Assembly (NCBI GenBank): GCA_002269645.1
Contig: NIVC01001098.1
Coordinates: forward strand, 62,001 to 126,000
DNA: 64,000 bases
Direction: 5' to 3'
Origin: Macrostomum lignano
Lineage: Eukaryota
Both the position numbers and the translations under genes were made by a program. Below the pieces are notes generated by a model. That model worked only from the letters and a program-made list of their open reading frames with translations, had not been told where the DNA came from and did not search any database. Positions within the stretch are counted from its first letter, which is position 1. Every line of letters starts with the position of its first letter. This document shows positions 42,033 through 61,516 of the stretch, in pieces.

Positions 42033-43142
42033 ATGAGGCCGCTCCAAGCAACGCTGGCTGCAGTCCTGCTGCTGGCCTTCTGCGCCGGCTTCAATGCCGA
42101 ATCAATCATCGGAACCGTTCAAGTGATGTACTCCGGCTACAAGTTCAATGGCTTGAAGGTGAACGCCTCCGGAGTAAACGAGTCGAAAGAAATTCATCGA
42201 TTCCTCAGCATTCCATACGCTCAGCCGCCCACCGGAAACCGGCGGTTCGCCAAGCCCGAAGCGCTGGACTTCAGCAGAGACGTCGAAATCGATGCCTCAG
42301 AGCAGCCTCCGCTGTGCCCACAGGACAACTCCACCAAGAGCCTGCCGTACAGCGAGGACTGCCTGTACATGAACATCTGGTCGCCTGACACCACCTCGGG
42401 TACCAAGTACCCCGTGCTGGTCTACATCCACGGTGGACGCTTCGAGACTGGCGGCATCGCTGAGCCGGAGTACCAGGGCGAGACCCTTGTGCGAAATCAG
42501 AATATCGTCTTCGTGACCATCAACTACCGACTGGGCGCCACTGGCTTTCTCTACCTGGATTCGACACTGATGCCAGGTAACTTTGGCCTGCTGGATCAGC
42601 GCCTGGCTCTGAAGACGATCACTGATATGATAAGTGCTTTCGGCGGAGACCCGAACAGAATCACCCTGGCCGGCCACGGAACCGGCTCCGCTTCTGTCGG
42701 GTTCCACATCGCCACTCAAGATGTCCCGGTCACCCGTGCGGTGATGATGGGCGGCTCGCACCTCATGCCCCTGGTCTGGTCGAACGACATCGATGCAGTG
42801 AGGGGCGTTAGTGAGCGCTTCGCGAACATTCAGCTGAACTGCGCTCGTGGGGAGGGCAAGCTTCAAGAGGTGATCGAATGCCTGCGAAATGACATCTCCA
42901 TTGAGAGGCTGATCGAAGAGCAGAAGAACTACGAGAAGCTCTACATTTCGCTCGAGTTCATGCCCGTGCTGGACAAAGAGTTTTTTAACTTTATGGACCC
43001 GCTAATAACTTGGGGCGAGCGCCGTAAGAACGTCACTTTGCTGATGGGCGTCACCGCTGACTCCGGAATCGAGTTCGCCCTCAACTCGCTGCGCACTCGC
43101 AACCTCACCACCGACATCCTCAACCGCGATGTGTACTACGAG
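42033..43142 (+). CDS. Exon 1: signal peptide plus esterase-like domain 1 (type A), N-part
   Basis: ATG at 42033; donor GAG|GTGAGT, phase 0; nucleophile elbow GHGTG. Confidence 0.92.
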
Positions 43143-46100
43143 GTGAGTAGCTTTTCCTATGCTAGGCGAATGTCCCCGCGGATATTGTTCATCCGGCTAT
43201 CCAAGACCACCTGCTCTGTTGCAACAGTTGTTGCGACATTGAGCAAACTCAGCAGTTTTAAATTATTGATCGTTGTAGGACTGACTTTAGGCTCAATATA
43301 CTTAAATCCATGTACATTAAAAACCAGAAACCAAATCTGAACATTCAACTTTCTCACAGTGGTGCGGGCCATTTACTCAAGGTATTCTAAGTGAAGGCAC
43401 AACCCGATCATTGTACTCGCAATCTCTGCTCACTTACTCTGAACATTCTGCCCCTGATATGCCCTTGGACTGTACAGTAAACATTTGTTCTCTATTTATC
43501 TCTTATAAAAGTTGTTGCGTGAGTGAAAATACATCAGAACCTGAAGATGGCCCTTGTTGGACCGAAACGCTTTGGAAGAATTTAATCTAACCTAATCTAC
43601 GAGCTATGTTGATTTTCACATTTATTTTCAATTGTTCGTTTACTTGTAAATCAATAAGCCTCATCCTCACCCCGCCTTGCCCGTCCCGCCGCAGATCCTG
43701 CGCCAGCAGTTCGTGCACTACCCCCGCTTCCCCACCGAGCTGGACGACACCGGGCTGAAATTCCTCCAGCTGTCGCACACCGAGTGGAACGACGCCCAGA
43801 ACAAAGAGCTGCTGCTGAAAAAATGGTCCGAGGCTCTGGGCGACTTCAGCTTTCTCTGCCCGACCCTCTACGCCCTGTTCGATGATGACAGGCCGCAGCC
43901 GGGAGAGGACATGAACGCCTACCTGTACTACTTCGGTGCTCCGGACCCGTTTAGGGACAACGAGGCGCCCGGACACGTCAACGATGTGCGCTACTTCCTT
44001 GGCGTCCCGGACGGCCCTGGCCTCCCGTACCCGAGCGAGCACAACGAGCTGGCCAAGCGCATGATGGAGGATCTGGCCAACTTTGTCACCACCGGAAGGC
44101 CGAGTGAGGAAATTGTTTAGAATATGAATTTCAAAGGAAACAGCCCATTCCAGTAAATGTCAAATCCTCTAAGAATGAACTGAATTTCCTGCCATTCCTA
44201 CAGCAGTGGGTAATCCAACTCATACCCACTCTCATTGCCTCCTTTGCATTCTTATGATGAATTTTTCGCGGACTCTCAGCCCAGTCAAACCCAGCGCTAA
44301 ATGGCTACCCCGGGATTTCACACACAGACAACAACTGGCGCAGCGTGATCGCCGGGGACTGGAACTACAACAGCTACCTGCCGGTGCAGGACCCCGGCCT
44401 CTACGACTTAACTGGCGGCTTCGCCATCCGCCGCTGCCGCTGGTGGTACGACACCCTCAGCTTCGTGAACCGCCTCGTGCCGGGCGACTCTGCGAAGCCG
44501 ATGAGCCCGCTGCGGCAGGACCCGTTTCTGCTGGACGGCAGCACCATCGGTGCGGCGCCGGCCCGCTCGAAGCCGCAGCAAGAGGCTGCCGCCAACAATT
44601 TCCAGCCCACATCCGCGCAAATCATTGACAATGCCACTGTGGAGCTCACCGAGGTCGGCGCCACTGTCAGGGGGCACCGGCTCTCCGCGAACGCGAACGG
44701 GAAGGAGATTGAGCGATTCCTCGGCATTCCGTACGCGCAGCCGCCAACCGGCGATCTGCGATTCGCGAAGCCGGCTCTGAAGGACATTGCAAACGGTGAG
44801 TTACATTAAACATTGCAGCTGCAAGAAAAAGAGGCAGATCAAGGTTTTCGGTCCGAAAGTCAAACCCACAAGCAAAGATGAGAAAAAATATTCTGACAAT
44901 TCAGCAGAATAAGCCAGCTCATTTTTTTATAAAACAGTTTGCAGACTACAAAATTGCGCTTAGCCAAATCCAACGAAATTTCGTTACATCCAACGAAAGC
45001 CTTCTACTGCCAAAATGCTATTAAATAATTGCTAGCAATTATTTCCTATCTTCCTATATCTCATATTTCCCATATCTTCCTATCTCGCCATATCTCGAAA
45101 TTTGGAGGATTTTCATGTGTAGCGTCCCGCTGCTGCAGTTGTCCATGTACCTGTGCAATATGAACAGTTGTTCATGTACCTGTGCAATATTAACAGTTGT
45201 TCATGTACCTGTGCAATATTAACAGTTGTTCATGTACCTGTGCAATATGAACAGTTGTTCATGTACCTGTGCAATATGAACAGTTGTTCATGTACCTGTG
45301 CAATATTAACAGTTGTTCATGTACCTGTACAATATGAACAGTTGTTCATGTACCTGTGCAATATGAACAGTTGTTCATGTACCTGTGCAATATGAACAGT
45401 TGTTCATGTACCTGTGCAATATAAACAGTTGTTCATGTACCTGTGCAATATGAACAGTTGTTCATGTACCTGTGCAATATGAACAGTTGTTCATGTACCT
45501 GTGCAATATGAACAGTTGTTCATGTACCTGTGCAATATGAACAGTTGTTCATGTACCTGTGCAATATGAACAGTTTTTCATGTACCTGTGCAATATAAAC
45601 AGTTGTTCATGTACCTGTGCAATATGAACAGTTGTTCATGTACCTGTGCAATATTAACAGTTGTTCATGTGCCTGTGCAATATTAACAGTTGTTCATGTA
45701 CCTGTGCAATATGAACAGTTGTTCATGTACCTGTGCAATATTAACAGTTGTTCATGTACCTGTGCAATATGAACAGTTGTTCATGTACCTGTGCAATATG
45801 AACAGTTGTTCATGTACCTGTGCAATATGAACAGTTGTTCATGTACCTGTGCAATATTAACAGTTGTTCATGTACCTGTGCAATATTAACAGTTGTTCAT
45901 GTACCTGTGCAATATTAACAGTTGTTCATGTACCTGTGCAATATTAACAGTTGTTCATGTACCTGTGCAATATTAACAGGTGTTCATGTACCTGTGCAAT
46001 ATGAACAGTAGTTCATGTACCTGTGCAATATTAACAGTAGTTCATGTACCTGTGCAATATTAACAGTTGTTCATGTACCTGTGCAATATTAACAGTTGTT

Positions 46101-49100
46101 CATGTACCTGTGCAATATGAACAGTTGTTCATGTACCTGTGCAATATTAATCAAGGACCACTAGCAGTATATATACTCAGCAACATCGAAAAGTCGCCAT
46201 CACAGATCCGTCTGTGATCGCCGCTTTTGAGAGTGCAGGTAGTCTCTCAATCTTTGCGAGTGACGCAACTTAAATACGCCGCGGCAGACTTGAGTTGAGA
46301 AATGAAGTGGGGGAGCTGTGTGCGAGGGTTGGACGGATTAAAGCTACCCCGATGAGTTTTCTCGCATCTTTTATTTCAGAATGGTCCAAGAGAAATTGCT
46401 CACTGACGCATAGAGTGGCGACTTTTCAATGTTGCTGAGTCTTAGAACATGAAATGTAACATGAAATGTATAAAGAACATGAATGTTCTTAGAACATTTG
46501 AATTTTGCTCCAATGTTAGAAAAATTTCAAGCGCGCAGCGACACAAACTCAGCTGGCCCGCAGGCATAAAAACCCTTCGAGAGAGGGGGGTGGGCGCAAG
46601 CCGGGGGGTTGGCGGTGTACACAAAACCCGGTTAGTGCTGGCAGCACAAACCAGTTCAGAAGGTCTGTGCAGAGGACGGCGTGTGGCTGAGGCTGACTCA
46701 AGCCAGACAACTGTCTCAGTCTGCCTGCGCGAGGTTTGACCCCCACTTTTAGTGTGTCACAAGACACCTTCAAAACAGAAAAATTCGTCGAAATAAATTT
46801 CTTAGGAAAAATCACAAATAAAAATCACAATACCAACAACTTGTAAAGCCGCATTGGATAAAAGCATGCTGGCTTCAATTAATTTATCACCGGTAGTATG
46901 GAAGGTACGCTCGTAGTTTTGGGCTACAGGCTCTTAATGACTCCATCATTAGTTTGAAATGGCCCTGGGTCTTCAAGTAAATTTATTAAAGCCTTTCGAT
47001 TTACGCTCAAAACAGAAAAATGCACTTTTAGATTTTATCAGCGACCTCAAATGTCAGAATCTTCCAGATAGTTCCGACTTCTGCCCCTTCTGCAAGCTGT
47101 AGAAGTCCTTTCCTCAATTCCAAAAGCACTCCTGTTGAGCATCGCATAATTCTTATTTCTTCAATTTACTTTGCAGCTACCATCGATGCGCAAACGATGC
47201 CTAAGGCGTGTCCGCAGGCGTGGAATACGACCTTGGAAGAGGACGAGGACTGCCTCTACCTCAACATCTGGACTCCGAGACCTAGCCTGACAGCCAATGA
47301 GTCTCAGCAGGTCCCCGTACTGGTGTACTTTCACGGTGGCTTCTTCGAAGTCGGAGGCATCAACGATCCGTACCGGAGTGGCGAGAAGATTGTCGAGCTG
47401 CAGGACGTCGTCGTGGTTACCATCGGCTACCGACTGGGAGTTCTAGGATTCCTGCCCTTCTCGGCCGAGGGCAGCCGCGGAAACTTTGGCCTCTTCGATC
47501 AGGAGATGGCGCTCAAATGGGTGGAGGCGAATATTCACCACTTCGGTGGCAACGCCAGTCTCATCACCGCCGTGGGCGACGACGCCGGAGCCGTGTCCAT
47601 TGGCTACCACCTGATCCGCAACGAGACCCGGATCTCCAGGGTGATTCTCCAGACGGGCAGTCCGTCTATGGCCTATCCCCTGAACAACGACACCGATGGC
47701 ACCCGCATGCGCATCGAACAATACCTGCAGCTAATGGGATGCAACAACAGCACCACGGACGCCCAGTTGGCTTGCATGCGGGCCAAGTCCGTGTCGGATA
47801 TCAACAGTGTCTACACTAACGAGTTCGCCAACAAGTTCGGTCCGGAGGCCCTGGTCACAGTCGACGGAGACTTTCTCAAGGAGGACCCGTGGCATTCGGT
47901 GCAGCAGGGCGACATGTCCCAGGTGCCCATGATCGTCGGATTTGTCGACAGGCCGGGAAATGAGATCATCAACCGCAGGATTCGCTTCGGCGAGCTGGAC
48001 TTGGCAAACATTTCTTATGACGAAGTGCTGCAGGTAAGCCTCTAAAATATGTGGGTGAGTTTTATAAGTACTCGTAGATGAATAATTCACTATGCAACCA
48101 TAAACACTTGCAGAACATCGTTAACGCATCATACTACAACCCGAGGCTACCTAAGGAGCTGAAGCAGCCCGGAGCCACGCTGATCGGGATGCAATACCGA
48201 CCGCCGCTTCTGCATAGGCAGGTGCTGATTGACAGCCTTAGTGAGGCCTATAGTGACCGTTTCTACACCTGCGGAAACAACGAATACCTGCAGCAAGTGA
48301 TCTCTAAGCGGCATCCGCTTGATGCATTCCTGTATCACTATGTGTTCTCCGAGAAGTCCAATGTTGAAAATATTACATCCGATGGAGCAAGCTTGTGTAG
48401 GTGCCATTTTATTGCATTTTTATTAGTAGCCGATAAAAAATCAATCCAAAAAAGCCAAATAAATCAATATATATACACAAATCTACTCTACAGCCGAGGA
48501 CACCTTCTATCTCTTCGGAAATCCTTTGCAAGGACCTGAGTGGAACGATGAACAGAAGAGTCTGTCTGAAAAGATGATCGAATTATTCACGCACTTCGCC
48601 GAGACAGGAAATCCCAATCCTGAAAACAGTCTCGACCTGTGGTGGGAGTACACAGCAAATCTAAAGCCCTACCTTGTGCTCGATGCGCAGGTGCACAATG
48701 TGTCGGTAAATTGGGGCTTCCGGATTAACGACTGCGGATTCTGGCAGGAGGTTCTTCCCTACGTCAATGAGCTGAAGGAGCCGCCGGAACCAACCAGGCC
48801 TCCGATCGGACCAGAGGGAGAAATTATCGATGAAATCATCATTGAAATCGACCTCGGAAGAACGCAAAACAGGATCAGCATCGCCGGAGACTTGGTGCGA
48901 CTGCCAAACGGAAAGATCATCAAGCGATTCCTGGGTCTGCCCTACGCGGAAATGCCACTCACTCGGTGGAGCCAGGCTTCATTTCCGAAGGGTGGCAACT
49001 ACACAGCGAAGTCTATGCCACCAGCCTGTCCGCAAACCATCAATCCAGTTCCGGGAGGAAGCATGTCAGAGGATTGTCTGTACATAAACGTATTTTTTCC

Positions 49101-52100
49101 TAACGATACTTCAAATACGTACCCGACAGTAGTGTTCCTGCATGGCGGCAACTACACGAGTGGAGCTAACAGTCTGCCAGAGTATCGAGGTGAGCAGCTT
49201 CTCGAGAACGAGGACGTTATTCTCATCACGGTCAACTACCGACTGGGCGCGCTCGGCTTCCTGTTCCTGGACGATGAGAAGCTGCCCGGAAACTTCGGTC
49301 TGATGGACCAACGGCTCGCTCTCGACTTCATCCAAAGAGCGATCCCCTTTTTTGGAGGCAGCAGGACGCAGATCACTCTGATGGGTCACGGGACGGACGC
49401 CGCGTCGGCCGGCTTCCATGCTGTCACGGATTCGAAGGACTTCTTCGACCGGATGATCTTGATGGGCGGATCTCCGTCGATGCCGCTGGCTTGGTCGAGC
49501 TCGACTCAGAATGTTCTTGAAGATAGCGAGCATTTCGTCAATGTTCAACTCGAATGCGCAAGAGGCCCACTTGATTCGGTTTTGGAATGTCTGAGAAACC
49601 TTACATTGGATAAGATCATGACGGAACAGCTGAACATGCAGCACTCGAGAGATCACTTGGTATTCCTGCCCGTGTTCAACCAGTCGTTTTTTAACTACAC
49701 GCACCCGTACGACGCTTGGTCCAAGGGTGAGATGGACAAGCCATACATGACAGGCGTGGGCTCAGACTCTGGTCGCTACTACATCGAGCAGTCGCTGGCT
49801 CGACGGAACATCTCCTGGGAGTCGCTGAACCGAACTATTTTCGAAAGGGTAAGAAAAACTAACTGTTTTGAGCTATTTAAAATAACGGAAAACATAATAA
49901 CTCATTGAGAATATGATTGAAATGCAAATGGCAAACGTTCCAGATCGTGGAGCTGCAGTTTAACTACTTCCCCCGCTTCCCGGAGAGGAACACGGCTACC
50001 GGAATTCAATTCCTCAAGCTGGCCCTCACTGAGTGGAACTACTACGACTACAACAAGCGGATCAAGGCTATCTGGTCCAGGGCGATGGGTGACTTTAACT
50101 TCCTGTGCCCCATCTGGGAGGCCACGAGCGACCTACTGAGGGCCAAGCAGCACGACATTCACATGTACTACATAGATGTGGAGGACCCGTTGCGGGTACA
50201 GGAGGATCTGATCGGCGCTGACCACTGGGGCGACATCCGCTACCTGTTTGGCGAGCCGCTCAGGAAGGATTTGTACCCGGAGGTTCACAAGAACCTTTCC
50301 CGACTGATGATGCACGACTTTGTCCAGTACATTGGGGGATCAGGTGAGAGCCAAAAAACGTTAGGGAAGCGTAGTACGATTTTATTTTCAATTATTTCCT
50401 ATTTTTTCCTATTTCAAAGAAAGACTTTCGTCAGCAGAATTTCTGCATAAGAAGAAAAACAGAAGATAGGAGTAAAGAAAACCTGGACCACTGACTTTTA
50501 AACCGAAATGCATATTTTGTCCATCTTAAATGATTGGTTGGCCATAAATTCAATTTAAGCATCGTACTCGTAGCGTAGTTTTAAACAGTGTTTTAATCAA
50601 AGTTTGAAAAAATCTTTTTGTACGAGCTAGCTATTGACTACCAATATGCAAGAAAAGTTAAAAAAATCAGACATATCGATCATGCTGTTCTGTAGAGTTT
50701 GTTTAAATGACCACTTGATAGTGCTCATATTAAGTGCTGTTTTCATGTACAGAGCAAGCTGTCTTCCCAATTTGCAGCACCATCTCACTGGAATGCAACA
50801 AGCCAGGAGACGTCAGACTTTCTACTGTACGACATCCTGCAAACGGACTCCGGCGGTCCGGGAAACCTGGTCTCTGTCATGGTGCCGGACGGTTTCGGCC
50901 TGAACACTGGCCGGTGCCCGCTCTGGAAAAACGAGCTGCCCTACGTCAAATCGTTTGTCAGCGCCCCCTTCCAGGAAGAAGAGACTTCGAAAATAATCGC
51001 CAGTGCAAGCAGAAAGCGACCAGCAATCGGAAAGACCAGCAGCGTAAAAGACGAATCGGAGTTTAATCTCTACGAAGTCGTGTCGAACTATACTGTGGAC
51101 GTTCCCGGCTTCGGCAAGGTGACGGGGCAGACCATCATGACTCTGTCGAACAATATCACCATGTCCCAGTTTCTCGGAGTTCGGTATGCGCAGCCGCCTG
51201 TCGGAAATCGTCGATTGGCAAAGCCAGTGAAGCCACATACAACATCAGGTGCACATTTTCATTAATTTTGAGCCAAATTTATAATAGTTACTCCATATAA
51301 AACAATGCATTTAACCTAAACATTTTTATATCTCAATTCCAGACTCAAAGCATTTGGCACTGACAATGCCGCCAATGTGCATCCAGAGAGAGCATCACAA
51401 CCGGAACATGTCTGAGGATTGTCTCTACCTCAATATTTGGACTCCAAGACGCGCTGGCAGGAACGTGAATGACATCCCCGTGCTTGTTTTTATTCATGGA
51501 GGCTTTTTTGAAGTCGGAGGTATTAGCGAGGATCGCTGGCAGGGAAGCATGATCTTGGATCACTACGATGCAGTCGTGGTTACCATGAACTACCGACTTG
51601 GAGCTTTCGGCTTCCTGTCACTCGACAACAAGGAAGTGATCGGAAACTACGGTCTGTGGGATCAGGAGATGGCTTTGCAGTGGGTGGCCGATAACATTGA
51701 GAGCTTCGGCGGCAACAAGAACCGCATCACCCTGATGGGCGTGGAGGCTGGCGCCGTGTCGATCGGTTACCACATGGCCAGGCCAAAGCAAAACCGGTTT
51801 CACCAGGTCGTCCTCATGACCGGCTCTCCGTACATGTCCTACCCGCTGTCGGATGACATTGAGGAAGTGCGTGACCTGCAATACAGCTTTTTGCGAAGAC
51901 TGCGATGCCCAGTCGACCCAGCTGAAGCTCTAGAGTGCATTCGTAGTCAACCGGCTGATTCAATTAATGAGCAGCAGGACGTGTTCCAGCAACTGTTCCA
52001 GCGGCTTGAATTCCCACCCATTATTGATGGCGACTTCATCAGGTTGGATCCTTGGACGATGGACCCGAGCACACTGATGCAGGTGCCCATGATATTCGGA

Positions 52101-55100
52101 GGAGTGGACCGACCTGGAAACACGTTTATCGAAAGACTGGTGGACACTGAGATCCTTGTGCCAGAGAACTTTAGTCATAACGCGTACTTAACGGTGAGTA
52201 ATTATCTTTAAAGTTTTATGCAATCTGAAAATTCAATTGTGTCAGGAATTTCACTCACGTATTTTTTACCTATAAAGACAACATTTATCAAAGTTTTCTT
52301 ACGTACGAGCTATCATTAAATAAAAAGTAATGGATGCCCTTAAATAGCTCGTACTCATAATGTTAATATTTTTTGCTCAGGACGTCTCAAAAACCGCACA
52401 CTTTAATTCAATCCAAAAGAACAAGTCGGTACTCTGAACTTTTAGATTCTGCAAAGCATGAACGAATTCTTCCCGAGATACCCCAAGAGCATGACTGTGT
52501 CCGGGCGGACGGGCCTGCGCAACCACTTCATGCAGTACAACGGACAGGGCAATTTTGAGCGGGATCTCAGAGACCTAGGACTAGCGCTCAGCGATCGCTA
52601 CTTCACCTGCGCGAATAACAAGTTCCTTGATGCGTACTCCAAAGCCTCGAGCAAGCCTGTTTACAATTATCTGTTCACTGAGGGCAAGGAATACAAGGGA
52701 GACACAGAGCTTCCCCTGCAGCATGCAAGTCTTTGTGAGTCGAAAGCTGCAGTATTGATTTTCGTTTTCTCTCACAGCATTTTAAAGTCAAACTGCTTAA
52801 GCTCGTAAACTTAAAAGCTTAAGAATCTGCAACACTTATTAATTTTTCCCTTTCAGTCGAGGACGCATTCTATGTGTTCGGCAATCCCTCCAGCCCCGGT
52901 CCAATTGTGCCAGACCAACAGCGGCGGCTGTCCGACGCCATCATGCACGCCATCGTTCAGTTTGCTCGAACCGGCCGTCCATCTGACCTTTTGAAATGGG
53001 ACCCGTACGACTCTGAGAAGAAGTCACATCTGCTGCTCGACGCCGACCATCTCCCTCCGACGATGTATCCTGATGGGTACAGGAGACAGGAGTGCGGCTT
53101 CTGGGACCACACTTTACCGTTCGTCGACAGCCTGAACGACACTGCGCCGCCGCCGACCAGACCTCCGATCGGTCCCGATGGCGGCATTATTGAGGAAATC
53201 ATCATTGAAATCGACCTCGGAAGAACGCAAAACAGGATCAGCATCGCCGGAGACTTGGTGCGACTGCCAAACGGAAAGATCATCAAGCGATTCCTGGGTC
53301 TGCCCTACGCGGAAATGCCACTCACTCGGTGGAGCCAGGCTTCATTACCAAAGGGTGGCAACTACACAGCAAAGACAATGCCACCGGCCTGTCCACAAAC
53401 CATCAATCCAGTTCCGGGAGGAAGCATGTCTGAGGATTGTCTGTACCTGAACATTTGGGCACCGCGCGACACGTCCAGAAGTTATCCAACAGCAGTGTTC
53501 CTGCATGGCGGCAACTACACGAGTGGAGCTAACAGTCTGCCAGAGTATCGAGGTGAGCAGCTTCTCGAGAACGAGGACGTTATTCTCATCACGGTCAACT
53601 ACCGACTGGGCGCGCTCGGCTTCCTGTTCCTGGACGACGAGAAGCTGCCCGGAAACTTCGGTCTGATGGACCAACGGCTCGCTCTCGACTTCATCCAAAG
53701 AGTGATTCCCTTTTTTGGAGGCAGCAGGACGCAGATCACTCTGATGGGTCACGGGACGGACGCCGCGTCGGCCGGCTTCCATGCTGTCACGGATTCGAAG
53801 GACTTCTTCGACCGGATGATCTTGATGGGCGGATCTCCGTCGATGCCGCTGGCTTGGTCGAGCTCGACCCAAGAGGTTCTCGAAGATAGCGAGCATTTTG
53901 TCAATGTTCAACTAGACTGTGCAAGAGGCCCACTTGATTCGGTTTTGGAATGTCTGAGAAACCTTACATTGGATAAGATCATGACGGAACAGCTGAACAT
54001 GCAGCACTCGAGAGATCACTTGGTATTCCTGCCCGTGTTCAACCAGTCGTTTTTTAACCACACCCATCCATATGATCGCTGGTGGAATGGCGAGATGAAC
54101 AAGCCGTACATGACAGGCGTGGGCTCAGACTCTGGTCGCTACTACATCGAGCAGTCGCTGGCTCGACGGAACATCTCCTGGGAGTCGCTGAACCGAACTA
54201 TTTTCGAAAGGGTAAGCAACTGACCATACTTCTGTTTCACTATAAAAAGTGAAACAGCTTGCACTATAAAATCCAAAAATCCTTTATTAAACGAAAGAAG
54301 CATCGATGCCATGCCTTTTCTTGAATACCTTTCAGATCGTGGAGCTGCAGTTTAACTACTTCCCCCGCTTCCCGGAGAGGAACACGGCTACCGGAATTCA
54401 ATTCCTCAAGCTGGCCCTCACTGAGTGGAACTACTACGACTACAACGAGCGTATCAAAGCCATCTGGTCCAGGGCGATGGGTGACTTTAACTTTCTGTGC
54501 CCCATCTGGGAGGCCACGAGCGACCTACTGAGGGCCAAGCAGCACGATATTCACATGTACTACATAGATGTGGAGGACCCGTTCAGGGCGCAAGAGGGTT
54601 TGATCGGCGCTGACCACTGGGGCGACATCCGCTACCTGTTTGGCGAGCCTATGAGGCGAGACGGATATCCGGAGGTTCATAAGGATCTGTCCCGACTGAT
54701 GATGGACGACTTTGTTCAGTATATTGGTGGATCAGGTGAGCTTTCCTAGGATCAATAAATGGTTTTTTTACTGTTTTTTGGTGCTTCATTTTTTTCTTGC
54801 TCTAAAACTCTGTTTTTTCTTTAGCTCCTGCCCGCTGGAACCGAACGAGCTTCCAAAACTCAGACTTCCTGCTGTACGACGTTGTTCTGCCAGACTCAGG
54901 CGGTGCTGGAAACGTGATCTCAGTCATGGTTGGCGACGGCTTCGGTCTAAACAGTGGCCGCTGCCCAGTCTGGAAGAATGAGCTGCCCTACGTGAACACG
55001 CTAGTCCCGACTACGACAGCAAGCGAGGAAGAAAACTTTGTCAAACTGCTCTCTAGCAGTGGCGAGCGGCCGGCCAGGACACCCAACTTGCAGCCTCAAC

Positions 55101-58100
55101 GCGCCACACCGTTCAATGTGCACGAAGTCATTGCGAATTACACTATTCAGGTTCCTGACTTCGGGCACGTTCGTGGACACACCATAAGAACAATCTCAAA
55201 TGTCACAATGTCTCACTTCCTTGGAATTCCGTTCGCACAGCCGCCCGTAGGAAATCTTCGGTTGGCTAAGCCGGATAAGCCCTCCACTACATCAGGTGGG
55301 ATTTCAAGCCTTTATTATGGTTTATAAATAATCAAGCGTGTAGGTTTACAGACTGTCTAATTCTAAAATTATTTTTCAGATACACAGCACATTGCACAAC
55401 AGATGCCGCCAGCTTGTATGCAGATGCAGAATTACAATTTCACAATGTCCGAAGACTGCCTCTATCTCAACGTCTGGACTCCAAAACGAGAGGGTAGAGA
55501 TGTCACCAATCTGCCTGTGCTAGTTTTCCTTCACGGAGGTTTCTTTGAAGTTGGAAGCGTTGGCGAAGATCGCTGGCAGGGAAGCATGATCTTGGATCAC
55601 CAGGACGCAGTCGTGGTTACCATCAACTATCGTTTAGGTGTGTTTGGCTTCCTGTCACTCGACAACAAGGAGGTGATCGGAAACTACGGTCTGTGGGATC
55701 AGGAGATGGCTTTGCAGTGGGTGGCCGATAACATTGAGAGCTTCGGCGGCAACAAGAACCGCATCACCCTGATGGGCGTGGAGGCTGGCGCCGTGTCGAT
55801 CGGTTACCACATGGCCAGGCCAGGGCAGAACCGGTTTCACCAGGTCGTCCTCATGACCGGCTCTCCGTACATGTCCTACCCGCTGACGAACGATACTGAG
55901 GAGGCGCGAGAGTTGCAAGTGACCTTTGTTCGAACCAGGCTCCGCTGCCAGGGGGCTGAGCTGCTGTCTTGCATTCGCGGCCTGTCCGCCAATGAGATTA
56001 ATGAGCAGCAGGGAGTGTTCCAACAGTTGTTCCAACGAATTGAGTTTCCACCAGTGGTCGATGGTGATTTCATTACAAGTGATCCTTGGACTGTAAACCC
56101 GAGCTCACTGATGCAGGTGCCCATGATCTTTGGTGGAGTAGACCGACCCGGAAATTTCCTTCTGGAGAGAGCCACTGACGGTCTTCTTTTGACACCGAGG
56201 AACTTCACTCATAATGTTTATCTCCAGGTTTGTACTTGACTTGAGCTTAACCATATTAATTATCATTATTTTGTGATCTGTAACTTTCGAATTTTCTTTC
56301 TGTTTTTCAGACTCTACAGCGCATGACCGAGTATTTTCCGCGGTTTCCGAAGTCAATGACGACTGCCGGCAGAAATGGCCTGCGCAACCACTTCAGGCAG
56401 TACAACGGACAGGACAATTTCGAGCGTGATATCAGAGACCTGGGCCTCGCCATCAGTGACCGCTACTATACATGCGCTAACAACAAGTTCCTTGACGCCT
56501 ACTCCAAGGCTTCCAGCCAGCCAGTCTACAACTATCTGTTCACAGAAGGGAAGGAATATGAGGAGTCAGAACTTCCACTGCTGCACGCTAGCCTTTGTGA
56601 GTTGAACCTTCGGATTATAAAGCGTATGAATGCATTTTAGATATTTACTATTGTGGTATCTTCAAGAGTGTTAATTTCCCAAAACCAAAATAAAAAATGT
56701 AATCGTACATTAGAAAAATCTACAAGAAAGTACTTTTATTATAGAATACTAAAAAATACATATAAACTCTGCTAATTTCAAATTTTCGATGTTTAATTAT
56801 TTCTATTAAAACTGATACCGGGTAAAGAAGTTTAAATTTTCGAGCTCAAATTCTCTTGCACGTCCATAAATTAATTTTAGTCGAGGACGCGTTCTACGTG
56901 TTTGGCAATCCGTCAAGCCCTGGCCCTGCACGACCTGATGAGCAGCGCGAGCTGTCTGACGAAATTATGCGGTCGATCGTCAATTTTGCTAGAAACGGCG
57001 AGCCTGGCGGCGGGATCCCTTGGGAACGGTACGACGCGTCCAACAAATCGCATCTGCTCCTGGATGCTGACAACCTACCACCAAGGATGTACAAGGACGG
57101 CTACAGGCGACAGCAGTGCGGATTCTGGGACGAGATACTGCCGTATGTGAACAGCTTGAATGACACGGGCACCACGCCGCCACCAACTGCACCACCAACG
57201 CGGCCTCCAATCGGACCAGACGGCACAGTTGTCGGAAATGCCACGGCTTCCATCACTCCTGACCTTTCCATCGTCGGACATCGCGTTCTCACACCAAACG
57301 GAATGAAGAACATCTCTCGATTTCTGGGCGTGCCGTATGCGGAACCTCCTGTCGGAGACCTCCGATTTGCTCCGCCGAGAGCTATTCCCAATAGTCCGGG
57401 CAAATTCATTGCGCAAACGCTGCCTCACGCCTGCCCACAAGACAATCGCACTCTTGGTGTAGCATACTCTGAAGACTGTCTGTACCTAAACATCTGGACG
57501 CCCGATGCAGTTCAAGGACGCAACTACCCAGTGATCGTTTACCTTCACGGCGGGAACTTTGAATCCGGCTCCATCAGTCAGCGCGAACTGTTCGGTGAGA
57601 ATCTTCTCTCGTACGAGGATGTTGTTCTAGTCACTGTGGCCTACCGGCTGGGCGCATTCGGCTTCCTATATCTTAGCGATAGCGAGCTTCCTGGAAACAT
57701 GGGTTTGTTGGATCAGCGTCTGGCGTTGAACGAGGTGAAGAGGTACATCAGCATGTTCGGTGGAGACCCCGAGAACATTGCACTAGCTGGCCACGGCATC
57801 GGAGCAGCAGCCGTTGGATTCCACAGCATCACCGCATCGAAGCAGAATTTCAAGCGAGCGATCATGATGGGTGGCTCGCCAACAATACCAATGGCCTGGT
57901 ACGACAGCAACGGAGGCAAGGAAAACACCCGAGAGCTGAACCTTGCATTCGTGTCCCTCGCGCTTGGCTGCCCAAGTACTACTATCTCCGAGGCCATCAC
58001 CTGCCTTAAAACCCTGGATACTAAAAATATTGTGGACGCGCAAACTCCATTCTTGCAGCTACTTCTCACTCTAGAGTTTAGACCTGTGCTGGATAGTGCC

Positions 58101-61100
58101 TTCTTCAACAACCGCGACCCACTTGAGGCTTGGAGGCACCAGGAGCAAGGCTCGTCAAACACTGAAATGCTAATGGGATTCACAACTGACACCGGTGGAA
58201 GCTATGTGGAACAAGCCCTGGTGAACCAGAATCTAACCCTCGCTGACATTGATACAGAAACCTACAAGGAGGTAGAGTAATTTTGACCAAATTTTTGTGC
58301 GTTTTCTACAAATACCAAACGTTTAAAATTAATGATTGGAATCGTACTTCATTTTCAGCTTCTCAACCGAACTTTCCCTTACCACCCGCGATTCCCTCGC
58401 AAACTGAGCGAAACTGGCACGGACTTTATCAATCTGTACTTCGACGACTACATCGGCAGTCCCGACAAGCAGACTCTGCTTAACACCTGGGGCCAGGCAG
58501 TCGGAGATCGCTATTTCCTTTGCCCTGTGTGGGAGACAATCGTGCAGAAGGGCCGGAACCAGACTAGCACTGAGACCTACCTGTACGTGTTTACTGCTCG
58601 AGACCCATGGGATACTGACCGAATGCAACTGGGCTCAGACCATCAGGCCGATCTGCGCTACTTCTTTGGCATTCCGGCGGGCACTGGCATCGCCTACCCA
58701 GAATCGCACAGAAACCTTTCCGTTCGCATGATGCGCGACATTGTCAAGTTCGTAAAGGACGGCAAGCCAAGTGAGTAAAAAGGACAAACTTTCTTAAAAA
58801 GTAATTTTCATGGATAGGTAAATAAGGCAAACTACGCACCAAACATTTTAGACCCATCCTGGCAGACAACAAAACTCGGAGTATGGGACTACGCCGACTA
58901 CAACAACCTCTATAGTGATCGCTACAATGCCACCGAAGGAGCCAGCACTATTCAACGCTGCGGAGTCTGGTACTATGATCTGCCGTATGTCGATGGCCTG
59001 GTGAAAAGTGCAAAGAAGTCGCCCGAACCACTGCGACGAAAGTCCGCGCTGTCTCTGCCTGACGTGACCACCAATGAGGCTCCCAAATCTGACAGCATCA
59101 TCCCGAGAAGAACGAGGACTGCAATTCGGAACTATAATGTCTCAGTAAGCGGCTATGGCACAGTTGTTGGAAGCACAGTGCTGACCACGGACAATAACAC
59201 AATATCGGAGTTTTTGGGTGTGCGATACGCCCAGCCACCGTTGGGAGATCTGCGTTTTAAGAAGCCCGAGCCGTTGAGGGACGCTGGTGATGGTAAGTCA
59301 GTTTTGCGTTACTACGAGCTAATGGAGTATTTGCTTAGACAATTAACTAATCAATCTTGTACTGATGCTTAGGTGTGACTCATCTGGCACTGGAAATGGG
59401 ACTTCCATGCTATCAAAGGAATTACTACAATTTCGCGAACATGAGCGAAGATTGCCTCACTCTAAATATCTGGACACCAAGAACCGAAAGCAACCCTAGC
59501 GGCACGTACCCGGTGATTGTGTTCATTCACGGTGGCTTCTTTGAAGTTGGATCCTCGGCGGAATCACGCTGGAACGGAGAGAATATCCTGGACCACGAGC
59601 AAGCTGTGATCGTTACAATCAACTATCGACTCGGCGCCTTTGGCTTCTTGGCTCTGAATAGCTCGATGGCCAGCGGCATTACCGGAAATATGGGCTTGTT
59701 CGACCAGGAGGCTGCCATCAGCTGGGTGGCGAAGAACATTGAAGCATTCGGTGGCGACAAGAATGCCATCACACTGGCGGGAGCTGAGGCCGGCTCCATC
59801 TCTGTTGGATACCACCTCCTCAGAGAACCGACTGCAAACAAGCCGTTCCACCGAGTCATCATGATGACTGGCAGCCCGATCCAAAGCTACCCGCTCAGCG
59901 ACAAGCCAGACTTTGTGAAGCAGTACCATGCCGAGTTCGTCAGGACTTTGAACTGCAGCTCTGATGTGGTCAACTGCCTGCAGTCTCTCTCAGCCGACGT
60001 TATTAACGAGAAGCAGGAAGATTTCAACCAGATTTTCACGGGCATTGAGTTCCAGCCCATCATTGACAATGACTTCTTTACCGCTGACCCATGGGTTCTC
60101 GTCCGGGATGGCAAATTTGCGAAGATGCCGATGATCATCGGCCAGACCAGCAGCCCAGGAAACTTCCTGCTGGAGCGCATTGTAGGCAACATTATTTTGA
60201 ACAAGGAGAACTTTACTCTGGAAACGTACCGACAGGTAACTGTCACTTTGATACTGACTACTTGGCTTCGAAAATTTGCTTTGTTGCTACCAAAATAATA
60301 AATAAAATATTCCCGATTTCCGCATAACCTCAGGCCCTGGTCGAGTCCAACACTTTCTTCCCAAGGTTCCCGACTCAAATGACAACCAGCGGACAGGAGG
60401 CTCTCAAACTATTCAAATCCCCATGGGCAAACCTGGAAAGCTTCGAGCTCAAGATTCGCGAGTGGGCGGAGGCGCTGAGCGACCGCTATTTCACTTGCGA
60501 CATCACCGAGTTTACCGAGAAGTTTGTCGAGAAAAACCCTACCAACTCCACTTATTACTATCTGTTTGACGAGAAGGCTCTGTTCCAAGGGGAAAGCCTG
60601 CCCCTGTTGGGCGCGACGCTGTGTAAGTTACAATGAGTTTTTTCCCATTGCGAATCGCCAGGTCTTTGCACTACTAGACCAAGCTAGCACAACCCGTCTG
60701 ATATTTCCAGTCGAAGACGCCTTCTTCTTCTTCGGAAATCCAACAAGCCCGGGCCCTGCCGAAACCGTTGAGAGAGCCAACCTCTCTGAATCCATCATGA
60801 GGCGCTTCGTCAAGTTTGCCAGGGACGGAAACCCGAATGCCAATCCCAGCTCCCCTACCTGGAGGCCATACGAGCTGGGCTTCAAGAAGACCAAGTACTT
60901 CCGGGCTCTCGGCATTGACAGGTTCCCAGAGCTGAACTTTGGCTTCCGCAGGCAGGACTGCGGCTGGTGGGAGAAAGTCCTGCCCTATGTTGACGATCTG
61001 GTCTACCCTGCGACTACAACTGCTACGAGTCCGACGGCCACACCGACGACGACCTCGACAACTGCACCGCCGACTACGACCATCTCAGCCACTAGTCCGA

Positions 61101-61516
61101 CTACGATCACCTCGACCAGTACTTCGGCTACGACCACCACAATGACTCCAGAGCCGACAACGATGACCACTCAGGCGCCGAGCAGCAGCACGAGGCCACC
61201 GATCGGTCCCCAGGACAGCCCAGACTCTGGCTTCTACGCTCTTGTTACCGTGATCCCGATCCTTGGCGTTGCCCTGATCGGTCTCGCCATCTTTGTGGTC
61301 GTTAAGGTGGTGATGGGCGCTAGCTCTGTGGTGGCTCCCACCGCCGCTGCAGCCGGAGGCGGCGCAGCAGCCTTTGGAGCGGCCGAGGCCGGCACTGCAG
61401 CTGCCCCCGCCTCCGCTGCTCCAGCCTCCGCCGAGAACCCAACCAGCGCAGAGGTGGTCAACGAGGCCTACGAGGCAGACGGGGCCGATGGAGAGGAAGG
61501 CTCAACGGACCTGTAG
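42033..61516 (+). CDS. Giant type I membrane protein (~4,700 aa, 21 exons) with 8 tandem catalytically inactive carboxylesterase/cholinesterase-like domains
   Basis: Signal peptide MRPLQATLAAVLLLAFCAGFNA. Eight repeats of FLG(I/V)PYA.PP / SEDCLY(L/M)N / HGG / NYRLG..GFL / GNxGLxDQ (slightly varied in some domains). All 20 predicted introns are GT-AG and phase-consistent. CDS sums to 14,103 nt with exon 3 starting at 44280. TM at 61232-61303; ends STDL-stop. Confidence 0.88.
43695..44103 (+). CDS. Exon 2: domain 1, C-part
   Basis: CAG|ATC acceptor; A|GTGAG donor, phase 1; contains GHVNDVRY. Confidence 0.88.
44280..44795 (+). CDS. Exon 3: end of domain 1, linker, start of domain 2 (acceptor could be 44328)
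   Basis: In-frame through CRWWYDTL to FLGIPYAQPP; donor G|GTGAGT, phase 1. Confidence 0.8.
45137..46150. repeat. 29-bp minisatellite (AACAGTTGTTCATGTACCTGTGCAATATG) in intron 3
   Basis: About 35 near-perfect copies. Confidence 0.97.
46175..46440. mobile_element. Probable MITE in intron 3 (25-bp TIRs)
   Basis: ACTCAGCAACATCGAAAAGTCGCCA vs TGGCGACTTTTCAATGTTGCTGAGT (24/25 inverted); no clear TSD. Confidence 0.6.
47177..48033 (+). CDS. Exon 4: domain 2 (type B) core
   Basis: TTGCAG|CT acceptor, CAG|GTAAGC donor; elbow GDDAG. Confidence 0.9.
48114..48396 (+). CDS. Exon 5: domain 2
   Basis: CAG|AAC acceptor; T|GTAGGT donor, phase 1, at the same position as in exons 10, 15 and 20. Confidence 0.85.
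48494..49848 (+). CDS. Exon 6: end of domain 2, PTRPPIGP linker, domain 3 (type A)
   Basis: A single open frame crosses the domain boundary; elbow GHGTD; AGG|GTAAGA donor. Confidence 0.92.
49944..50343 (+). CDS. Exon 7: domain 3, C-part
   Basis: CCAG|ATC acceptor, CAG|GTGAGA donor; contains GADHWGDIRY. Confidence 0.9.
50778..51248 (+). CDS. Exon 8: end of domain 3, linker, start of domain 4
   Basis: TTGCAG|CA acceptor in phase; CAG|GTGCAC donor. Confidence 0.85.
51343..52193 (+). CDS. Exon 9: domain 4 (type B) core
   Basis: Elbow GVEAG; ACG|GTGAGT donor. Confidence 0.9.
52446..52734 (+). CDS. Exon 10: domain 4
   Basis: TTTAG|ATT acceptor; T|GTGAGT donor. Confidence 0.87.
52857..54211 (+). 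CDS. Exon 11: end of domain 4, linker, domain 5 (type A)
   Basis: Single frame; elbow GHGTD; same length (1355 nt) as exon 6. Confidence 0.92.
54336..54735 (+). CDS. Exon 12: domain 5, C-part
   Basis: 400 nt like exon 7; contains GADHWGDIRY. Confidence 0.9.
54825..55295 (+). CDS. Exon 13: end of domain 5, linker, start of domain 6
   Basis: 471 nt like exon 8; TTTAG|CT acceptor, CAG|GTGGGA donor. Confidence 0.86.
55380..56227 (+). CDS. Exon 14: domain 6 (type B) core
   Basis: Elbow GVEAG; CAG|GTTTGT donor. Confidence 0.9.
56311..56596 (+). CDS. Exon 15: domain 6
   Basis: TTCAG|ACT acceptor; T|GTGAGT donor. Confidence 0.87.
56881..58271 (+). CDS. Exon 16: end of domain 6, linker, domain 7 (type A)
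   Basis: Single frame; elbow GHGIG; GAG|GTAGAG donor. Confidence 0.9.
58359..58770 (+). CDS. Exon 17: domain 7, C-part
   Basis: Contains GSDHQADLRY; A|GTGAGT donor. Confidence 0.88.
58852..59292 (+). CDS. Exon 18: end of domain 7, linker, start of domain 8
   Basis: TTTAG|AC acceptor in phase; G|GTAAGT donor. Confidence 0.85.
59373..60235 (+). CDS. Exon 19: domain 8 (type B) core
   Basis: Elbow GAEAG; CAG|GTAACT donor. Confidence 0.9.
60334..60622 (+). CDS. Exon 20: domain 8
   Basis: CTCAG|GCC acceptor; T|GTAAGT donor. Confidence 0.87.
60711..61516 (+). CDS. Exon 21: end of domain 8, Thr-rich stalk, TM helix, cytoplasmic tail
   Basis: CGWWEKVLPY, T-rich stretch, FYALVTVIPILGVALIGLAIFVVV, tail ending EEGSTDL-stop. 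Confidence 0.92.

What the first reader, a model, noticed from the sequence alone, without database searches (positions are those of the whole stretch)
42660..60640. Strict A/B alternation: the repeat unit is a two-domain module with asymmetric active-site decay
Odd domains (A) have a G-H-G elbow, as neuroligins have Gly at this position, and keep the triad His (GHVND, DHWGD, DHWGD, DHQAD). Even domains (B) have an acidic residue at the nucleophile position (D/E-A-G) and no His (ASL(S/F)ED). The five-intron phase pattern 0,1,1,0,1 repeats four times. An A-B pair therefore arose first and was then multiplied. Cholinesterase-fold proteins dimerise through a four-helix bundle, so each A-B pair could be a covalently linked heterodimer with two different ligand pockets.
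Basis: partly seen in the sequence, partly recalled or inferred. Interest (0 to 1): 0.72.

Follow-up and report, generated by a model that had tools for sequence, protein, structure and literature searches.

The report
Eight-domain dead-esterase membrane protein gene
A flatworm (Macrostomum lignano) gene encodes a giant cell-surface protein made of eight inactive cholinesterase-like domains of two strictly alternating types; this is an unusual, undescribed build of a known kind of adhesion-type protein, and its function is untested.

Summary
Window 42033-61516 (+) holds one 21-exon gene. All introns are GT-AG, and their phases run 0,1,1,0,1 four times. It encodes about 4,700 aa: signal peptide, eight full-length carboxylesterase/cholinesterase-fold domains in the order A-B-A-B-A-B-A-B, a Thr/Pro-rich stalk, one membrane helix and a short tail ending -STDL.

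All eight domains lack the nucleophile Ser, the acid and one oxyanion Gly. A domains have G-H-G and keep the His. B domains have Asp/Glu at the Ser position, Pro at the acid and Leu at the His.

A and B form two clades (98% and 96% bootstrap). These clades also contain the A and B halves of single-module A-B paralogs in the same species. One paralog carries all five module introns at the same positions and phases. An A-B unit therefore came first and was multiplied.

The window is Macrostomum lignano. The gene is already in UniProt as an uncharacterised, fragmentary model (A0A1I8G704).

The covalent-heterodimer idea is not supported by two AlphaFold2 runs (pTM 0.55-0.56, disordered A-B linker). 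It is not excluded either: linker asymmetry and class-specific residues in the dimer helices fit it.

The most likely role is non-catalytic cell-surface binding or adhesion.

The parts
42033..61516 (+). Whole gene: 21 exons, 4,700-aa type I membrane protein. Exons: 42033-43142, 43695-44103, 44280-44795 (alternative start 44328), 47177-48033, 48114-48396, 48494-49848, 49944-50343, 50778-51248, 51343-52193, 52446-52734, 52857-54211, 54336-54735, 54825-55295, 55380-56227, 56311-56596, 56881-58271, 58359-58770, 58852-59292, 59373-60235, 60334-60622, 60711-61516.
   Evidence: all introns GT-AG, no internal stop, phases 0,1,1,0,1 four times; 96-99.6% identical to UniProt A0A1I8G704 (P0328). No RNA evidence was examined.
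42033..42098 (+). Signal peptide (aa 1-22)
   Evidence: Second most hydrophobic 19-mer of the protein, directly after the start Met. Inferred from sequence.
42099..44467 (+). Domain A1 (aa 23-569): elbow GHGTG at 42672-42686, His motif GHVND at 43971-43985
   Evidence: Pfam PF00135, E=1.4e-97. Six Cys. A clade 98%.
44468..44614 (+). A1->B1 linker, 49 aa, poorly conserved
   Evidence: pLDDT 29-43 in the model of this module.
44615..48765 (+). Domain B1 (aa 619-1149): elbow GDDAG at 47575, His position ASL|SED split by the intron at 48397-48493. Contains the 2.4-kb intron 3.
   Evidence: Pfam PF00135, E=6.9e-108. B clade 96%.
48766..48825 (+). B1->A2 linker, 20 aa, with the conserved PTRPPIGPEG motif, lying inside one exon
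   Evidence: The domain junction lies within exon 6.
48826..50947 (+). Domain A2 (aa 1170-1700): elbow GHGTD at 49384, DHWGD at 50220
51068..53125 (+). Domain B2 (aa 1741-2270): elbow GVEAG at 51738, ASL|FED at 52725-52864
53189..54994 (+). Domain A3 (aa 2292-2822): elbow GHGTD at 53747, DHWGD at 54612. 92% aa identity to A2.
55115..57149 (+). Domain B3 (aa 2863-3390): elbow GVEAG at 55775, ASL|FED at 56587-56888
57219..58991 (+). Domain A4 (aa 3414-3948): elbow GHGIG at 57789, DHQAD at 58638
59109..60991 (+). Domain B4 (aa 3988-4526): elbow GAEAG at 59780, ATL|FED at 60613-60718
60992..61231 (+). Thr/Ser/Pro-rich (69%) mucin-like stalk that ends with the same TRPPIGP motif as the B->A linkers
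61232..61312 (+). Single transmembrane helix (most hydrophobic 19-mer at aa 4611-4629)
61313..61516 (+). Cytoplasmic tail of 67 aa, Ala/Gly/acid-rich, ending -STDL, which fits the class I PDZ-ligand consensus S/T-x-hydrophobic; followed by the stop codon
   Evidence: The motif reading is inference from general knowledge.

Best explanation
This is one Macrostomum lignano gene for a giant, heavily glycosylated type I membrane protein. Its ectodomain is four tandem copies of a two-domain module, and each module is a pair of catalytically dead cholinesterase-fold domains of two old, separately conserved subtypes (A and B).

Shown here:
- The single open reading frame, in which the domain junctions lie inside exons.
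- The eight complete COesterase domains, each with the three canonical disulfides.
- Loss of the Ser nucleophile, the acid and oxyanion Gly122 in all eight domains.
- The A/B clades.
- Single-module A-B paralogs in the same species with the same five introns.
- Purifying selection on the domains.

Inferred history:
- An ancestral gene had the layout signal peptide, A, B, stalk, membrane helix, with five introns of phases 0,1,1,0,1.
- It underwent internal tandem duplications. The breakpoints lay just after the signal peptide and just after the juxtamembrane TRPPIGP motif. This is why that motif now ends every B->A linker and also the final stalk.
- A2 and A3 were later homogenised, probably by gene conversion.

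Inferred function:
- The protein is not an esterase. It most likely works like the cholinesterase-like adhesion molecules (neuroligin, gliotactin, neurotactin).
- The fold is used as a binding surface, held away from the membrane on a mucin-like stalk.
- The two pocket types, A (His202-Gly203 ... His447) and B (Phe122, Glu203, Tyr236, Pro334, Leu447), offer two different conserved sites, repeated four times.
- The -STDL end may couple the tail to PDZ scaffolds.

Whether A and B of one module pack against each other is open.
For: - Gene model and phases.
- Pfam PF00135 over the full length.
- Closest solved structures are AChE/BChE (E 1e-60 to 1e-68), with residue-level triad mapping. Foldseek TM-score 0.84-0.85 to AChE/BChE.
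- Six Cys per domain, 64 N-glycosylation sequons (all extracellular), one membrane helix, stalk 69% T/S/P.
- Identity matrix.
- Trees: family 98-100%, A clade 98%, B clade 96%.
- Single-module paralogs P0095/P0096/P0097 score 850-1300 bits, against at most 728 bits for any protein from another species.
- The paralog gene has all five module introns at the same positions and phases.
- dN/dS is 0.14-0.43 for the seven domain pairs where dS could be estimated.
- Class-specific conserved sites concentrate in the old active site.
- Species assignment: the retrotransposon pol ORF is 99% identical to an M. lignano protein, and the gene product is 96-99.6% identical to UniProt A0A1I8G704 of M. lignano.
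Against: - No transcript evidence was examined. Three splice choices differ from the UniProt model, though none changes a phase.
- No expression, localisation or binding data exist in the searched literature.
- Function is inferred by analogy only.
- The family forms its own clade and is not nested in the neuroligins, so the adhesion analogy is not orthology.
- The A and B trees are not fully congruent. B4 groups with B2/B3 (61%), but A4 does not group with A2/A3. The single-module paralogs nest inside the module radiation. The order of duplications is therefore unresolved, and a single-module gene could instead derive from a multi-module one.
Confidence: 0.8

Rival explanations
1. Each A-B module is an intramolecular, covalently linked heterodimer. 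It would be held together by the alpha3(7,8)/alpha10 four-helix bundle that cholinesterases and neuroligins use for homodimers, so the protein would be four compact didomain beads.
For: - ChE-fold proteins do dimerise through this bundle (PMC5943944). L380 and F535 are its hydrophobic core in human AChE (PMC6856767).
- Both helices are present in all eight domains.
- The A->B linker is long (39-49 aa), variable and disordered. The B->A linker is short (20-23 aa), Pro-rich and conserved.
- The A-B order and pairing are conserved in the single-module paralogs.
- Bundle positions differ by class. At the L380 equivalent, A has Leu in 6/6 domains and B is variable (M, N, N, L, R, L). At the F535 equivalent, A has E/D/T and B has V/I/T. 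The residue before the alpha10 Cys is Arg in all A domains and Asp/Glu/Gln in all B domains.
Against: - Two AlphaFold2 runs gave pTM 0.56 and 0.55 with well-folded domains. There is thus no confident relative placement.
- Very few alignment rows span both domains (about 3-7 per run), so covariation signal is weak.
- No coordinates or PAE were available.
- The same helices could equally serve A:A and B:B contacts between two chains, or contacts between neighbouring modules.
Confidence: 0.3
2. The 4,700-aa protein is a gene-model artefact: a tandem array of separate esterase-like genes wrongly joined, as in the Lineus longissimus 2,475-aa model.
For: Fused models of tandem carboxylesterase genes are common in databases. 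P0329 (Lineus) has four near-identical active domains, each preceded by its own signal peptide.
Against: - Here there is one signal peptide and one membrane helix only.
- Seven domain junctions lie inside continuous exons (exons 3, 6, 8, 11, 13, 16, 18), with no stop codon or start context between domains.
- An independent UniProt model also joins the domains.
- The single-module paralog shows that A and B belong to one polypeptide.
Confidence: 0.03
3. The locus is a decaying, non-functional remnant: inactive esterase pseudodomains drifting apart.
For: All eight catalytic triads are broken. No protein from this locus appeared in the two word-indexed searches.
Against: - The 14.1-kb ORF is intact across 21 exons.
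- dN/dS is 0.14-0.43.
- All 48 disulfide cysteines are kept.
- The replacement residues are conserved within each class across paralogs that are only about 30-45% identical.
Confidence: 0.04
4. B domains keep a hydrolytic or other catalytic activity that uses the Asp/Glu at the nucleophile elbow, as Asp-nucleophile alpha/beta hydrolases do.
For: Asp/Glu at the elbow is invariant in all six B domains. Glu at this position occurs only in this family among the 100 domains sampled.
Against: B domains also lack the His (Leu in 6/6), the acid (Pro) and oxyanion Gly122 (Phe). No general base remains.
Confidence: 0.05

Closest known systems
Cholinesterase-like adhesion molecules (neuroligins, gliotactin, neurotactin, glutactin)
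   Same: - Cholinesterase-fold ectodomain without a working triad. Gly at the Ser position in A matches neuroligin-like proteins in the sample (for example GSGAG in hagfish neuroligin-4-like).
- Type I membrane topology.
- Ser/Thr/Pro-rich stalk.
- Short tail with a possible PDZ-ligand end.
   Different: - Eight domains instead of one, in two alternating subtypes.
- The family is a separate clade (100% bootstrap), not nested in the neuroligins.
- B has an acidic residue at the elbow and no His.
- No neurexin-binding or junction data exist.
Acetyl- and butyrylcholinesterase (closest solved structures)
   Same: Same fold and the same three disulfides. About 28-30% identity, Foldseek TM-score 0.84-0.85, and both bundle helices alpha3(7,8) and alpha10 are present.
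   Different: The triad, oxyanion Gly122 and nearly all gorge and peripheral-site aromatics (W86, Y124, W286, Y337, Y341) are replaced. The protein is multi-domain and membrane-anchored.
M. lignano single-module paralogs (BOX15_Mlig025559g1/g3 = P0096/P0095; A0A1I8I8B.. = P0097) and the single-domain BOX15_Mlig028046 (P0010)
   Same: Same family (100% clade). The single-module paralogs share the layout signal peptide, A (GHG), B (G-x-E-A-G with Leu at the His position), stalk, membrane helix. The five introns sit at identical positions and phases.
   Different: They have one module (or one domain) instead of four, and only about 30-45% identity. The A domain of Mlig025559 has also lost its His.
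Uncharacterised multi-COesterase membrane proteins of other phyla (Styela clava XP_077968891.1 with 4 domains; catshark scyTo_0000838 with 3; Lingula LOC106179609 with 3; Asterias LOC117293354 with 2)
   Same: Signal peptide, several tandem COesterase domains, stalk and membrane helix. The membrane-proximal domain often has Gly at the Ser position (GHGAG, GHGSG, GQGSG).
   Different: Their outer domains keep the Ser (Lytechinus excepted). There is no A/B alternation and no B-type domain. They do not group with this family.
Thyroglobulin C-terminal ChEL domain
   Same: A non-catalytic ChE-like domain used for folding and dimerisation inside a very large secreted protein (PMC5943944).
   Different: It is a single ChEL domain that follows Tg-type repeats. 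In module 1, the only part of this protein scanned against Pfam, the only other matches were alpha/beta-hydrolase families overlapping the COesterase region.

Membership tests
Carboxylesterase type B / cholinesterase fold (Pfam PF00135) | Full-length match to the family profile above the curated cut-off | tested here: met
   A1 scores 328 bits and B1 362 bits against a cut-off of 27, covering profile positions 19-487 and 7-515 of 515. The other six domains align end to end with these two.
Carboxylesterase type B / cholinesterase fold (Pfam PF00135) | Three conserved disulfides (AChE C69-C96, C257-C272, C409-C529) | tested here: met
   All six Cys are present in each of the eight domains.
Catalytically active cholinesterase/carboxylesterase | Ser-Glu/Asp-His triad plus the oxyanion hole (G121, G122, A204) | tested here: not met
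   At Ser203, A has Gly and B has Asp/Glu. At Glu334, A has Ser/Thr and B has Pro. His447 is kept in A only. Gly122 is replaced in all domains.
Neuroligin / CLAM type adhesion proteins | Non-catalytic ChE-like ectodomain on a type I membrane anchor with an O-glycosylated stalk | tested here: met
   Judged by sequence features only: signal peptide, dead domains, stalk 69% T/S/P, one membrane helix.
Neuroligin / CLAM type adhesion proteins | Phylogenetic placement inside the neuroligin (or gliotactin) clade | tested here: not met
   The family is its own clade (98-100%) and sits apart from the neuroligin-like sequences in the sample.
Neuroligin / CLAM type adhesion proteins | C-terminal PDZ-binding motif | tested here: inconclusive
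   The tail ends -STDL, which fits S/T-x-hydrophobic. The paralog ends -GYTG, so the motif is not conserved in the family.
Neuroligin / CLAM type adhesion proteins | Binding of a partner (neurexin or similar) and a role in cell contacts | not testable with these tools
   No data. The literature searches found nothing for this protein.
ChE-type four-helix-bundle dimer (here proposed as an intramolecular A:B pair) | Helices alpha3(7,8) and alpha10 present, with a hydrophobic L380/F535-type contact | tested here: inconclusive
   The helices are present. Leu at the L380 position occurs in all A domains but only some B domains. A hydrophobic residue at the F535 position occurs in four of the six B domains (Thr in the other two) and in no A domain.
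ChE-type four-helix-bundle dimer (here proposed as an intramolecular A:B pair) | A defined A-B interface in a structure or a confident model | tested here: not met
   AlphaFold2 gave pTM 0.56 (paralog) and 0.55 (this gene's A1-B1), with a disordered linker. Caveat: no PAE or coordinates were returned.
Macrostomum A-B didomain family (Mlig025559 type) | A (G-H-G) followed by B (G-x-D/E-A-G, Leu at the His position) in one chain, with shared intron positions | tested here: met

The most novel reading that the evidence does not exclude
The A-B module is an obligate, covalently fused heterodimer of two cholinesterase-fold domains packed through an asymmetric alpha3(7,8)/alpha10 bundle. This would be the first intramolecular version of the ChE/neuroligin dimer. 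Four such units on one stalk would make a multivalent receptor with two conserved, non-catalytic pocket types. The family is found so far only in Macrostomum.
Probability: 0.25. Interest if true: 0.6.

Novelty: new variant of a known kind. Interest (0 to 1): 0.45.

Why it matters
Non-catalytic cholinesterase-fold proteins (neuroligins, gliotactin, the thyroglobulin ChEL domain) show how an enzyme fold becomes a binding and dimerisation module. This gene adds three things:
- Two subtypes that have stayed paired in a fixed order through several duplications.
- A separate, conserved set of replacement residues in the old active site of each subtype.
- An eight-domain array, which is more than the 2-4 real tandem domains found in other phyla in these searches.

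If A and B pack through the classical dimer helices, the module would be a natural single-chain heterodimer of this fold. That would be useful for understanding how the bundle interface encodes partner specificity.

Macrostomum lignano is a laboratory model, and transgenesis has been reported for it (PMC5730564). RNAi and in situ methods are also in use there, to my knowledge. The function is therefore testable.

The practical gain for annotation is a corrected 4,700-aa model for a locus that UniProt holds as a 3,380-aa fragment.

Tried and rejected
I worked around this with exact exon translations and with substrings of returned proteins.

2. The two word-indexed homolog searches did not return the gene's own UniProt entry. 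For a while this suggested that the source was a species other than M. lignano. The retrotransposon search and the exhaustive search corrected this.

3. The mixed fragment alignment A3 misplaced A exons onto the B half and was not used. The B-only profile A4 kept only 211 positions because most rows were fragments. Its sensitivity was therefore low, and 'restricted to Macrostomum' is a weak negative.

4. The Rfam scan of the window found nothing.

5. Literature searches for tandem ChE-like domains, or for Macrostomum with carboxylesterase or neuroligin, found nothing relevant.

6. I considered and rejected three readings: a fused gene model, a pseudogene, and an Asp/Glu-nucleophile enzyme (see rivals).

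7. I tried to read the order of module duplications from tree congruence. The A and B topologies disagree for modules 1 and 4, and support is low, so I make no claim.

8. Foldseek of the didomain model against the PDB only re-found AChE/BChE for one domain. It says nothing about domain packing.
Full report
**What is there.** Three-frame translation of window 41-64 kb shows a run of long open segments on the + strand with carboxylesterase motifs.
- Joining them at GT-AG sites that keep the frame and the paralogous alignment gives one 21-exon gene, 42033-61516. The CDS is 14,103 nt (4,700 aa) with no internal stop.
- The product starts with a hydrophobic signal peptide.
- It then has eight domains of 528-547 aa.
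- A stalk that is 69% Thr/Ser/Pro follows.
- After it comes the single strongest hydrophobic segment of the protein (aa 4611-4629).
- It ends in a 67-aa Ala/Gly/acid-rich tail with the terminus -STDL.
- All 64 N-x-S/T sequons are extracellular.

**Identity of the domains.**
- Pfam PF00135 (COesterase) matches A1 and B1 at 328 and 362 bits over almost the whole profile.
- The best solved relatives are acetyl- and butyrylcholinesterases (E 1e-60 to 1e-68). A predicted model superposes on them with TM-score 0.84-0.85.
- Each domain keeps exactly the six cysteines of the three canonical disulfides.

None of the domains can be an esterase of the usual kind. In rat/human AChE numbering:

| Position | A domains | B domains |
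|---|---|---|
| Ser203 (nucleophile) | Gly | Asp (B1) or Glu |
| Glu202 | His | Val/Ala/Asp |
| Glu334 (acid) | Ser/Thr | Pro |
| His447 | His | Leu |
| Gly122 (oxyanion) | Arg/Asn | Phe |

The gorge and peripheral-site aromatics are gone in both classes. The only slip is that B4 reads ATLFED rather than ASLFED.

**A and B are two real classes.**
- Identity within a class is 37-48% (A2/A3 92%, B2/B3 75%). Between classes it is 27-36%.
- In a neighbour-joining tree of 100 COesterase domains, the eight window domains plus three M. lignano domains form a clade with 98% support.
- In a focused tree (33 taxa, 500 bootstraps) the family has 100% support, the six A domains 98% and the six B domains 96%.
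- Eight alignment columns are conserved within A, conserved within B and different between them. Four of these are active-site or adjacent positions (203, 229, 236, 447). Three others (403, 405, 414) flank Cys409.
- B is the more conserved class: 162 of 493 columns are conserved, against 115 for A.
- The picture is two fixed alternative states of the old pocket, not uneven decay.

**Source and database status.**
- The Ty3/gypsy pol ORF upstream (window 7600-10467) is 99% identical over its full length to a Macrostomum lignano protein.
- The exhaustive HMMER search put a 3,380-aa M. lignano entry at the top: UniRef100_A0A1I8G704, 'COesterase domain-containing protein', with 8 matched stretches and 811 bits.
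- That entry is 96-99.6% identical to my model, in three blocks, with pieces skipped and the C-terminus missing.
- The window is therefore M. lignano. The gene is already deposited as an unreviewed, incomplete model, and no paper in the searched library mentions it.

**The A-B unit is ancestral.**
- A profile of the four modules finds full-length single-module proteins in the same species. P0095 and P0096 (BOX15_Mlig025559, 1,232 and 1,234 aa) score 1,299 and 1,278 bits, and P0097 scores 849 bits. The best protein from any other species reaches 728 bits.
- P0095 and P0096 read: signal peptide, A (GHGAA), B (GAEAG, VDSPG, GASL|SDD), Thr/Pro stalk, membrane helix, tail.
- P0097 is an incomplete model with the same A (GHGNA) then B (GVEAG) order. 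Its ends are missing.
- Mapping P0095 onto its genomic locus gives eight introns. Five sit at exactly the positions and phases of the module introns here (0,1,1,0,1). Two more lie in the B core and one in the stalk.
- The halves of these paralogs fall in the A and B clades respectively. The A/B split and the five introns therefore predate all the duplications.
- The paralogs nest inside the module radiation. Monophyly of window A1-4 alone has 11% support, and of B1-4 alone 9%. The A halves of the paralogs group with A2/A3 at 86%. The A and B topologies also disagree for modules 1 and 4. The order of events is therefore unresolved.

**How the multiplication probably happened (inference).**
- No intron separates a B domain from the next A domain. 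Exons 6, 11 and 16 run from the B tail through a 20-23-aa linker into the A core.
- Those linkers all contain PTRPPIGP. The same TRPPIGP motif ends the final stalk, just before the membrane helix.
- This fits tandem duplications with one breakpoint just after the signal peptide and the other just after a juxtamembrane TRPPIGP.
- Modules 2 and 3 are mosaics. The A2/A3 exons are 90-98% identical in DNA (dS 0.26). B2/B3 have dS 1.22, and the introns are about 50-60% identical. This suggests later gene conversion of the A part.

**Is the gene functional?** The ORF is intact, all cysteines are kept, and dN/dS is 0.14-0.43 for the seven domain pairs where dS could be estimated. These results argue against a decaying remnant.

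**Is it a fused gene model?** A fused model is also unlikely.
- There is one signal peptide and one membrane helix.
- Domain junctions lie inside exons.
- An independent database model joins the domains.
- In contrast, the Lineus 2,475-aa hit carries a signal peptide before each of its four active domains and is a fused model.

**The heterodimer hypothesis.** Cholinesterases and neuroligins do dimerise through a parallel bundle of helices alpha3(7,8) and alpha10 (PMC5943944). L380 and F535 form the hydrophobic contact in human AChE, and L380R/F535K is monomeric (PMC6856767).

Features that fit an A:B bundle:
- Both helices are present in all domains.
- The intramodule A->B linker is long, variable and predicted disordered. 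The intermodule linker is short, Pro-rich and conserved.
- Bundle positions are class-specific. A has Leu at the L380 position in 6/6 domains, but Glu/Asp/Thr at the F535 position. B has Val/Ile/Thr at the F535 position and a variable L380 position.
- The residue before the alpha10 Cys is Arg in all A domains and Asp/Glu/Gln in all B domains.

Results against it:
- Two AlphaFold2 runs were made, one on the paralog's A-B ectodomain and one on this gene's own A1-B1 module (taken from the UniProt allele).
- They gave mean pLDDT 81 but pTM only 0.56 and 0.55. That is the value expected when two equal domains are each confident but not placed relative to each other.
- The tool returns no PAE or coordinates, and very few alignment rows span both domains.

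The hypothesis is therefore unsupported rather than refuted. I give it about 0.3.

**Most likely function.** By analogy, not orthology, this is a cholinesterase-like adhesion or receptor protein.
- It has a non-catalytic ChE fold on a glycosylated stalk with a short tail.
- The -STDL end fits a class I PDZ ligand, but this is not conserved in the paralog.
- The array would display two conserved pocket types four times each.
- No partner, tissue or phenotype is known.

**Comparison with what is known.**
- Real tandem COesterase membrane proteins exist in a tunicate (4 domains), sharks (3), Lingula (3) and echinoderms (2). In these the membrane-proximal domain often carries Gly at the Ser position. 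All are uncharacterised.
- None has a B-type domain or A/B alternation. Co-occurrence of A-like and B-like elbows was seen only in M. lignano proteins.
- Only M. lignano proteins, plus the fused Lineus model, passed E < 1e-30 in the exhaustive search. The profile used there was short, however.
- I rate this a new variant of a known kind, of moderate interest.

**Uncertain points.**
- Splice sites rest on sequence and paralogy only.
- Exon 3 may start at 44328 instead of 44280. This is the UniProt model's choice. It removes 16 aa and fits the other A domains better.
- The UniProt model differs at two more places, where my choice keeps conserved segments.
- None of these changes an intron phase.

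Noticed in passing
window 6865-10467 (+): Intact-looking Ty3/gypsy-type pol ORF with protease, RT, RNase H and integrase domains by Pfam. It is 99% identical to M. lignano BOX15_Mlig032217g3. I used it only to identify the species.
   Followed up: partly
window 45136-46147 (inside intron 3 of the gene): Minisatellite of a 29-bp unit, about 35 copies, 97% matches. It accounts for much of the only long intron (2,381 nt).
   Followed up: no
window 48785-50340 vs 53150-54735: The A2 and A3 exons are 90-98% identical in DNA (dS 0.26). The neighbouring B2/B3 exons (dS 1.22) and the introns between the exons (about 50-60% identity) are far more diverged. The mosaic pattern suggests exon-biased gene conversion.
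   Followed up: partly
window 44279 / 44327: There are two usable phase-1 acceptors for exon 3. The UniProt model uses the downstream one, which removes 16 aa (QSNPALNGYPGISHTD; the junction codon also changes from Thr to Asn) that the other A domains lack. This could be alternative splicing or simply the correct site.
   Followed up: partly
window 37047-39688 (-): ORFs with DUF3504, QRICH1 and weak phage-integrase matches, the kind of domain set left by Crypton-type tyrosine-recombinase elements. A frame break lies between the two main ORFs.
   Followed up: partly
window 341-2065 (+), 15451-15944 (-), 29600-33300: Long ORFs made of short tandem repeats that translate to hydrophobic or low-complexity peptides (for example LGLLSAVILGLLIAI repeats). 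They are almost certainly satellite DNA, not genes. Some repeats at 2838-6211 are 67-79% identical to repeats near the paralog locus L002.
   Followed up: no
window 62441-62629: A (CAGCAGT)n / 28-bp tandem repeat and Ser/Gln/Arg-rich ORFs lie downstream of the gene. There were no Pfam matches, and I could not tell whether another gene starts here.
   Followed up: no
P0330 (Styela clava XP_077968891.1), P0001/P0002 (catsharks), P0005 (Lingula), P0017/P0018 (echinoderms): A scattered, uncharacterised set of proteins with the layout signal peptide, 2-4 tandem COesterase domains, stalk, membrane helix. Their last domain repeatedly has Gly at the Ser position (GHGAG, GHGSG, GQGSG, GTGSA). This looks like a separate, wider family worth its own study.
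   Followed up: partly
P0010 (M. lignano BOX15_Mlig028046, locus L001 10001-12526): An intronless single-domain family member with an Asp-Glu-His arrangement (GLDAG, NDEG, ASHG), a Thr-rich N-terminal region, and the same EPPIGP motif before its membrane helix. It groups with the A clade (91%). It may retain a triad-like site with an Asp nucleophile.
   Followed up: partly
P0329 (Lineus longissimus XP_064631732.1): This 2,475-aa 'protein' is four near-identical active esterases, each with its own signal peptide. It is a fused model of a tandem gene array, not a multi-domain protein.
   Followed up: yes
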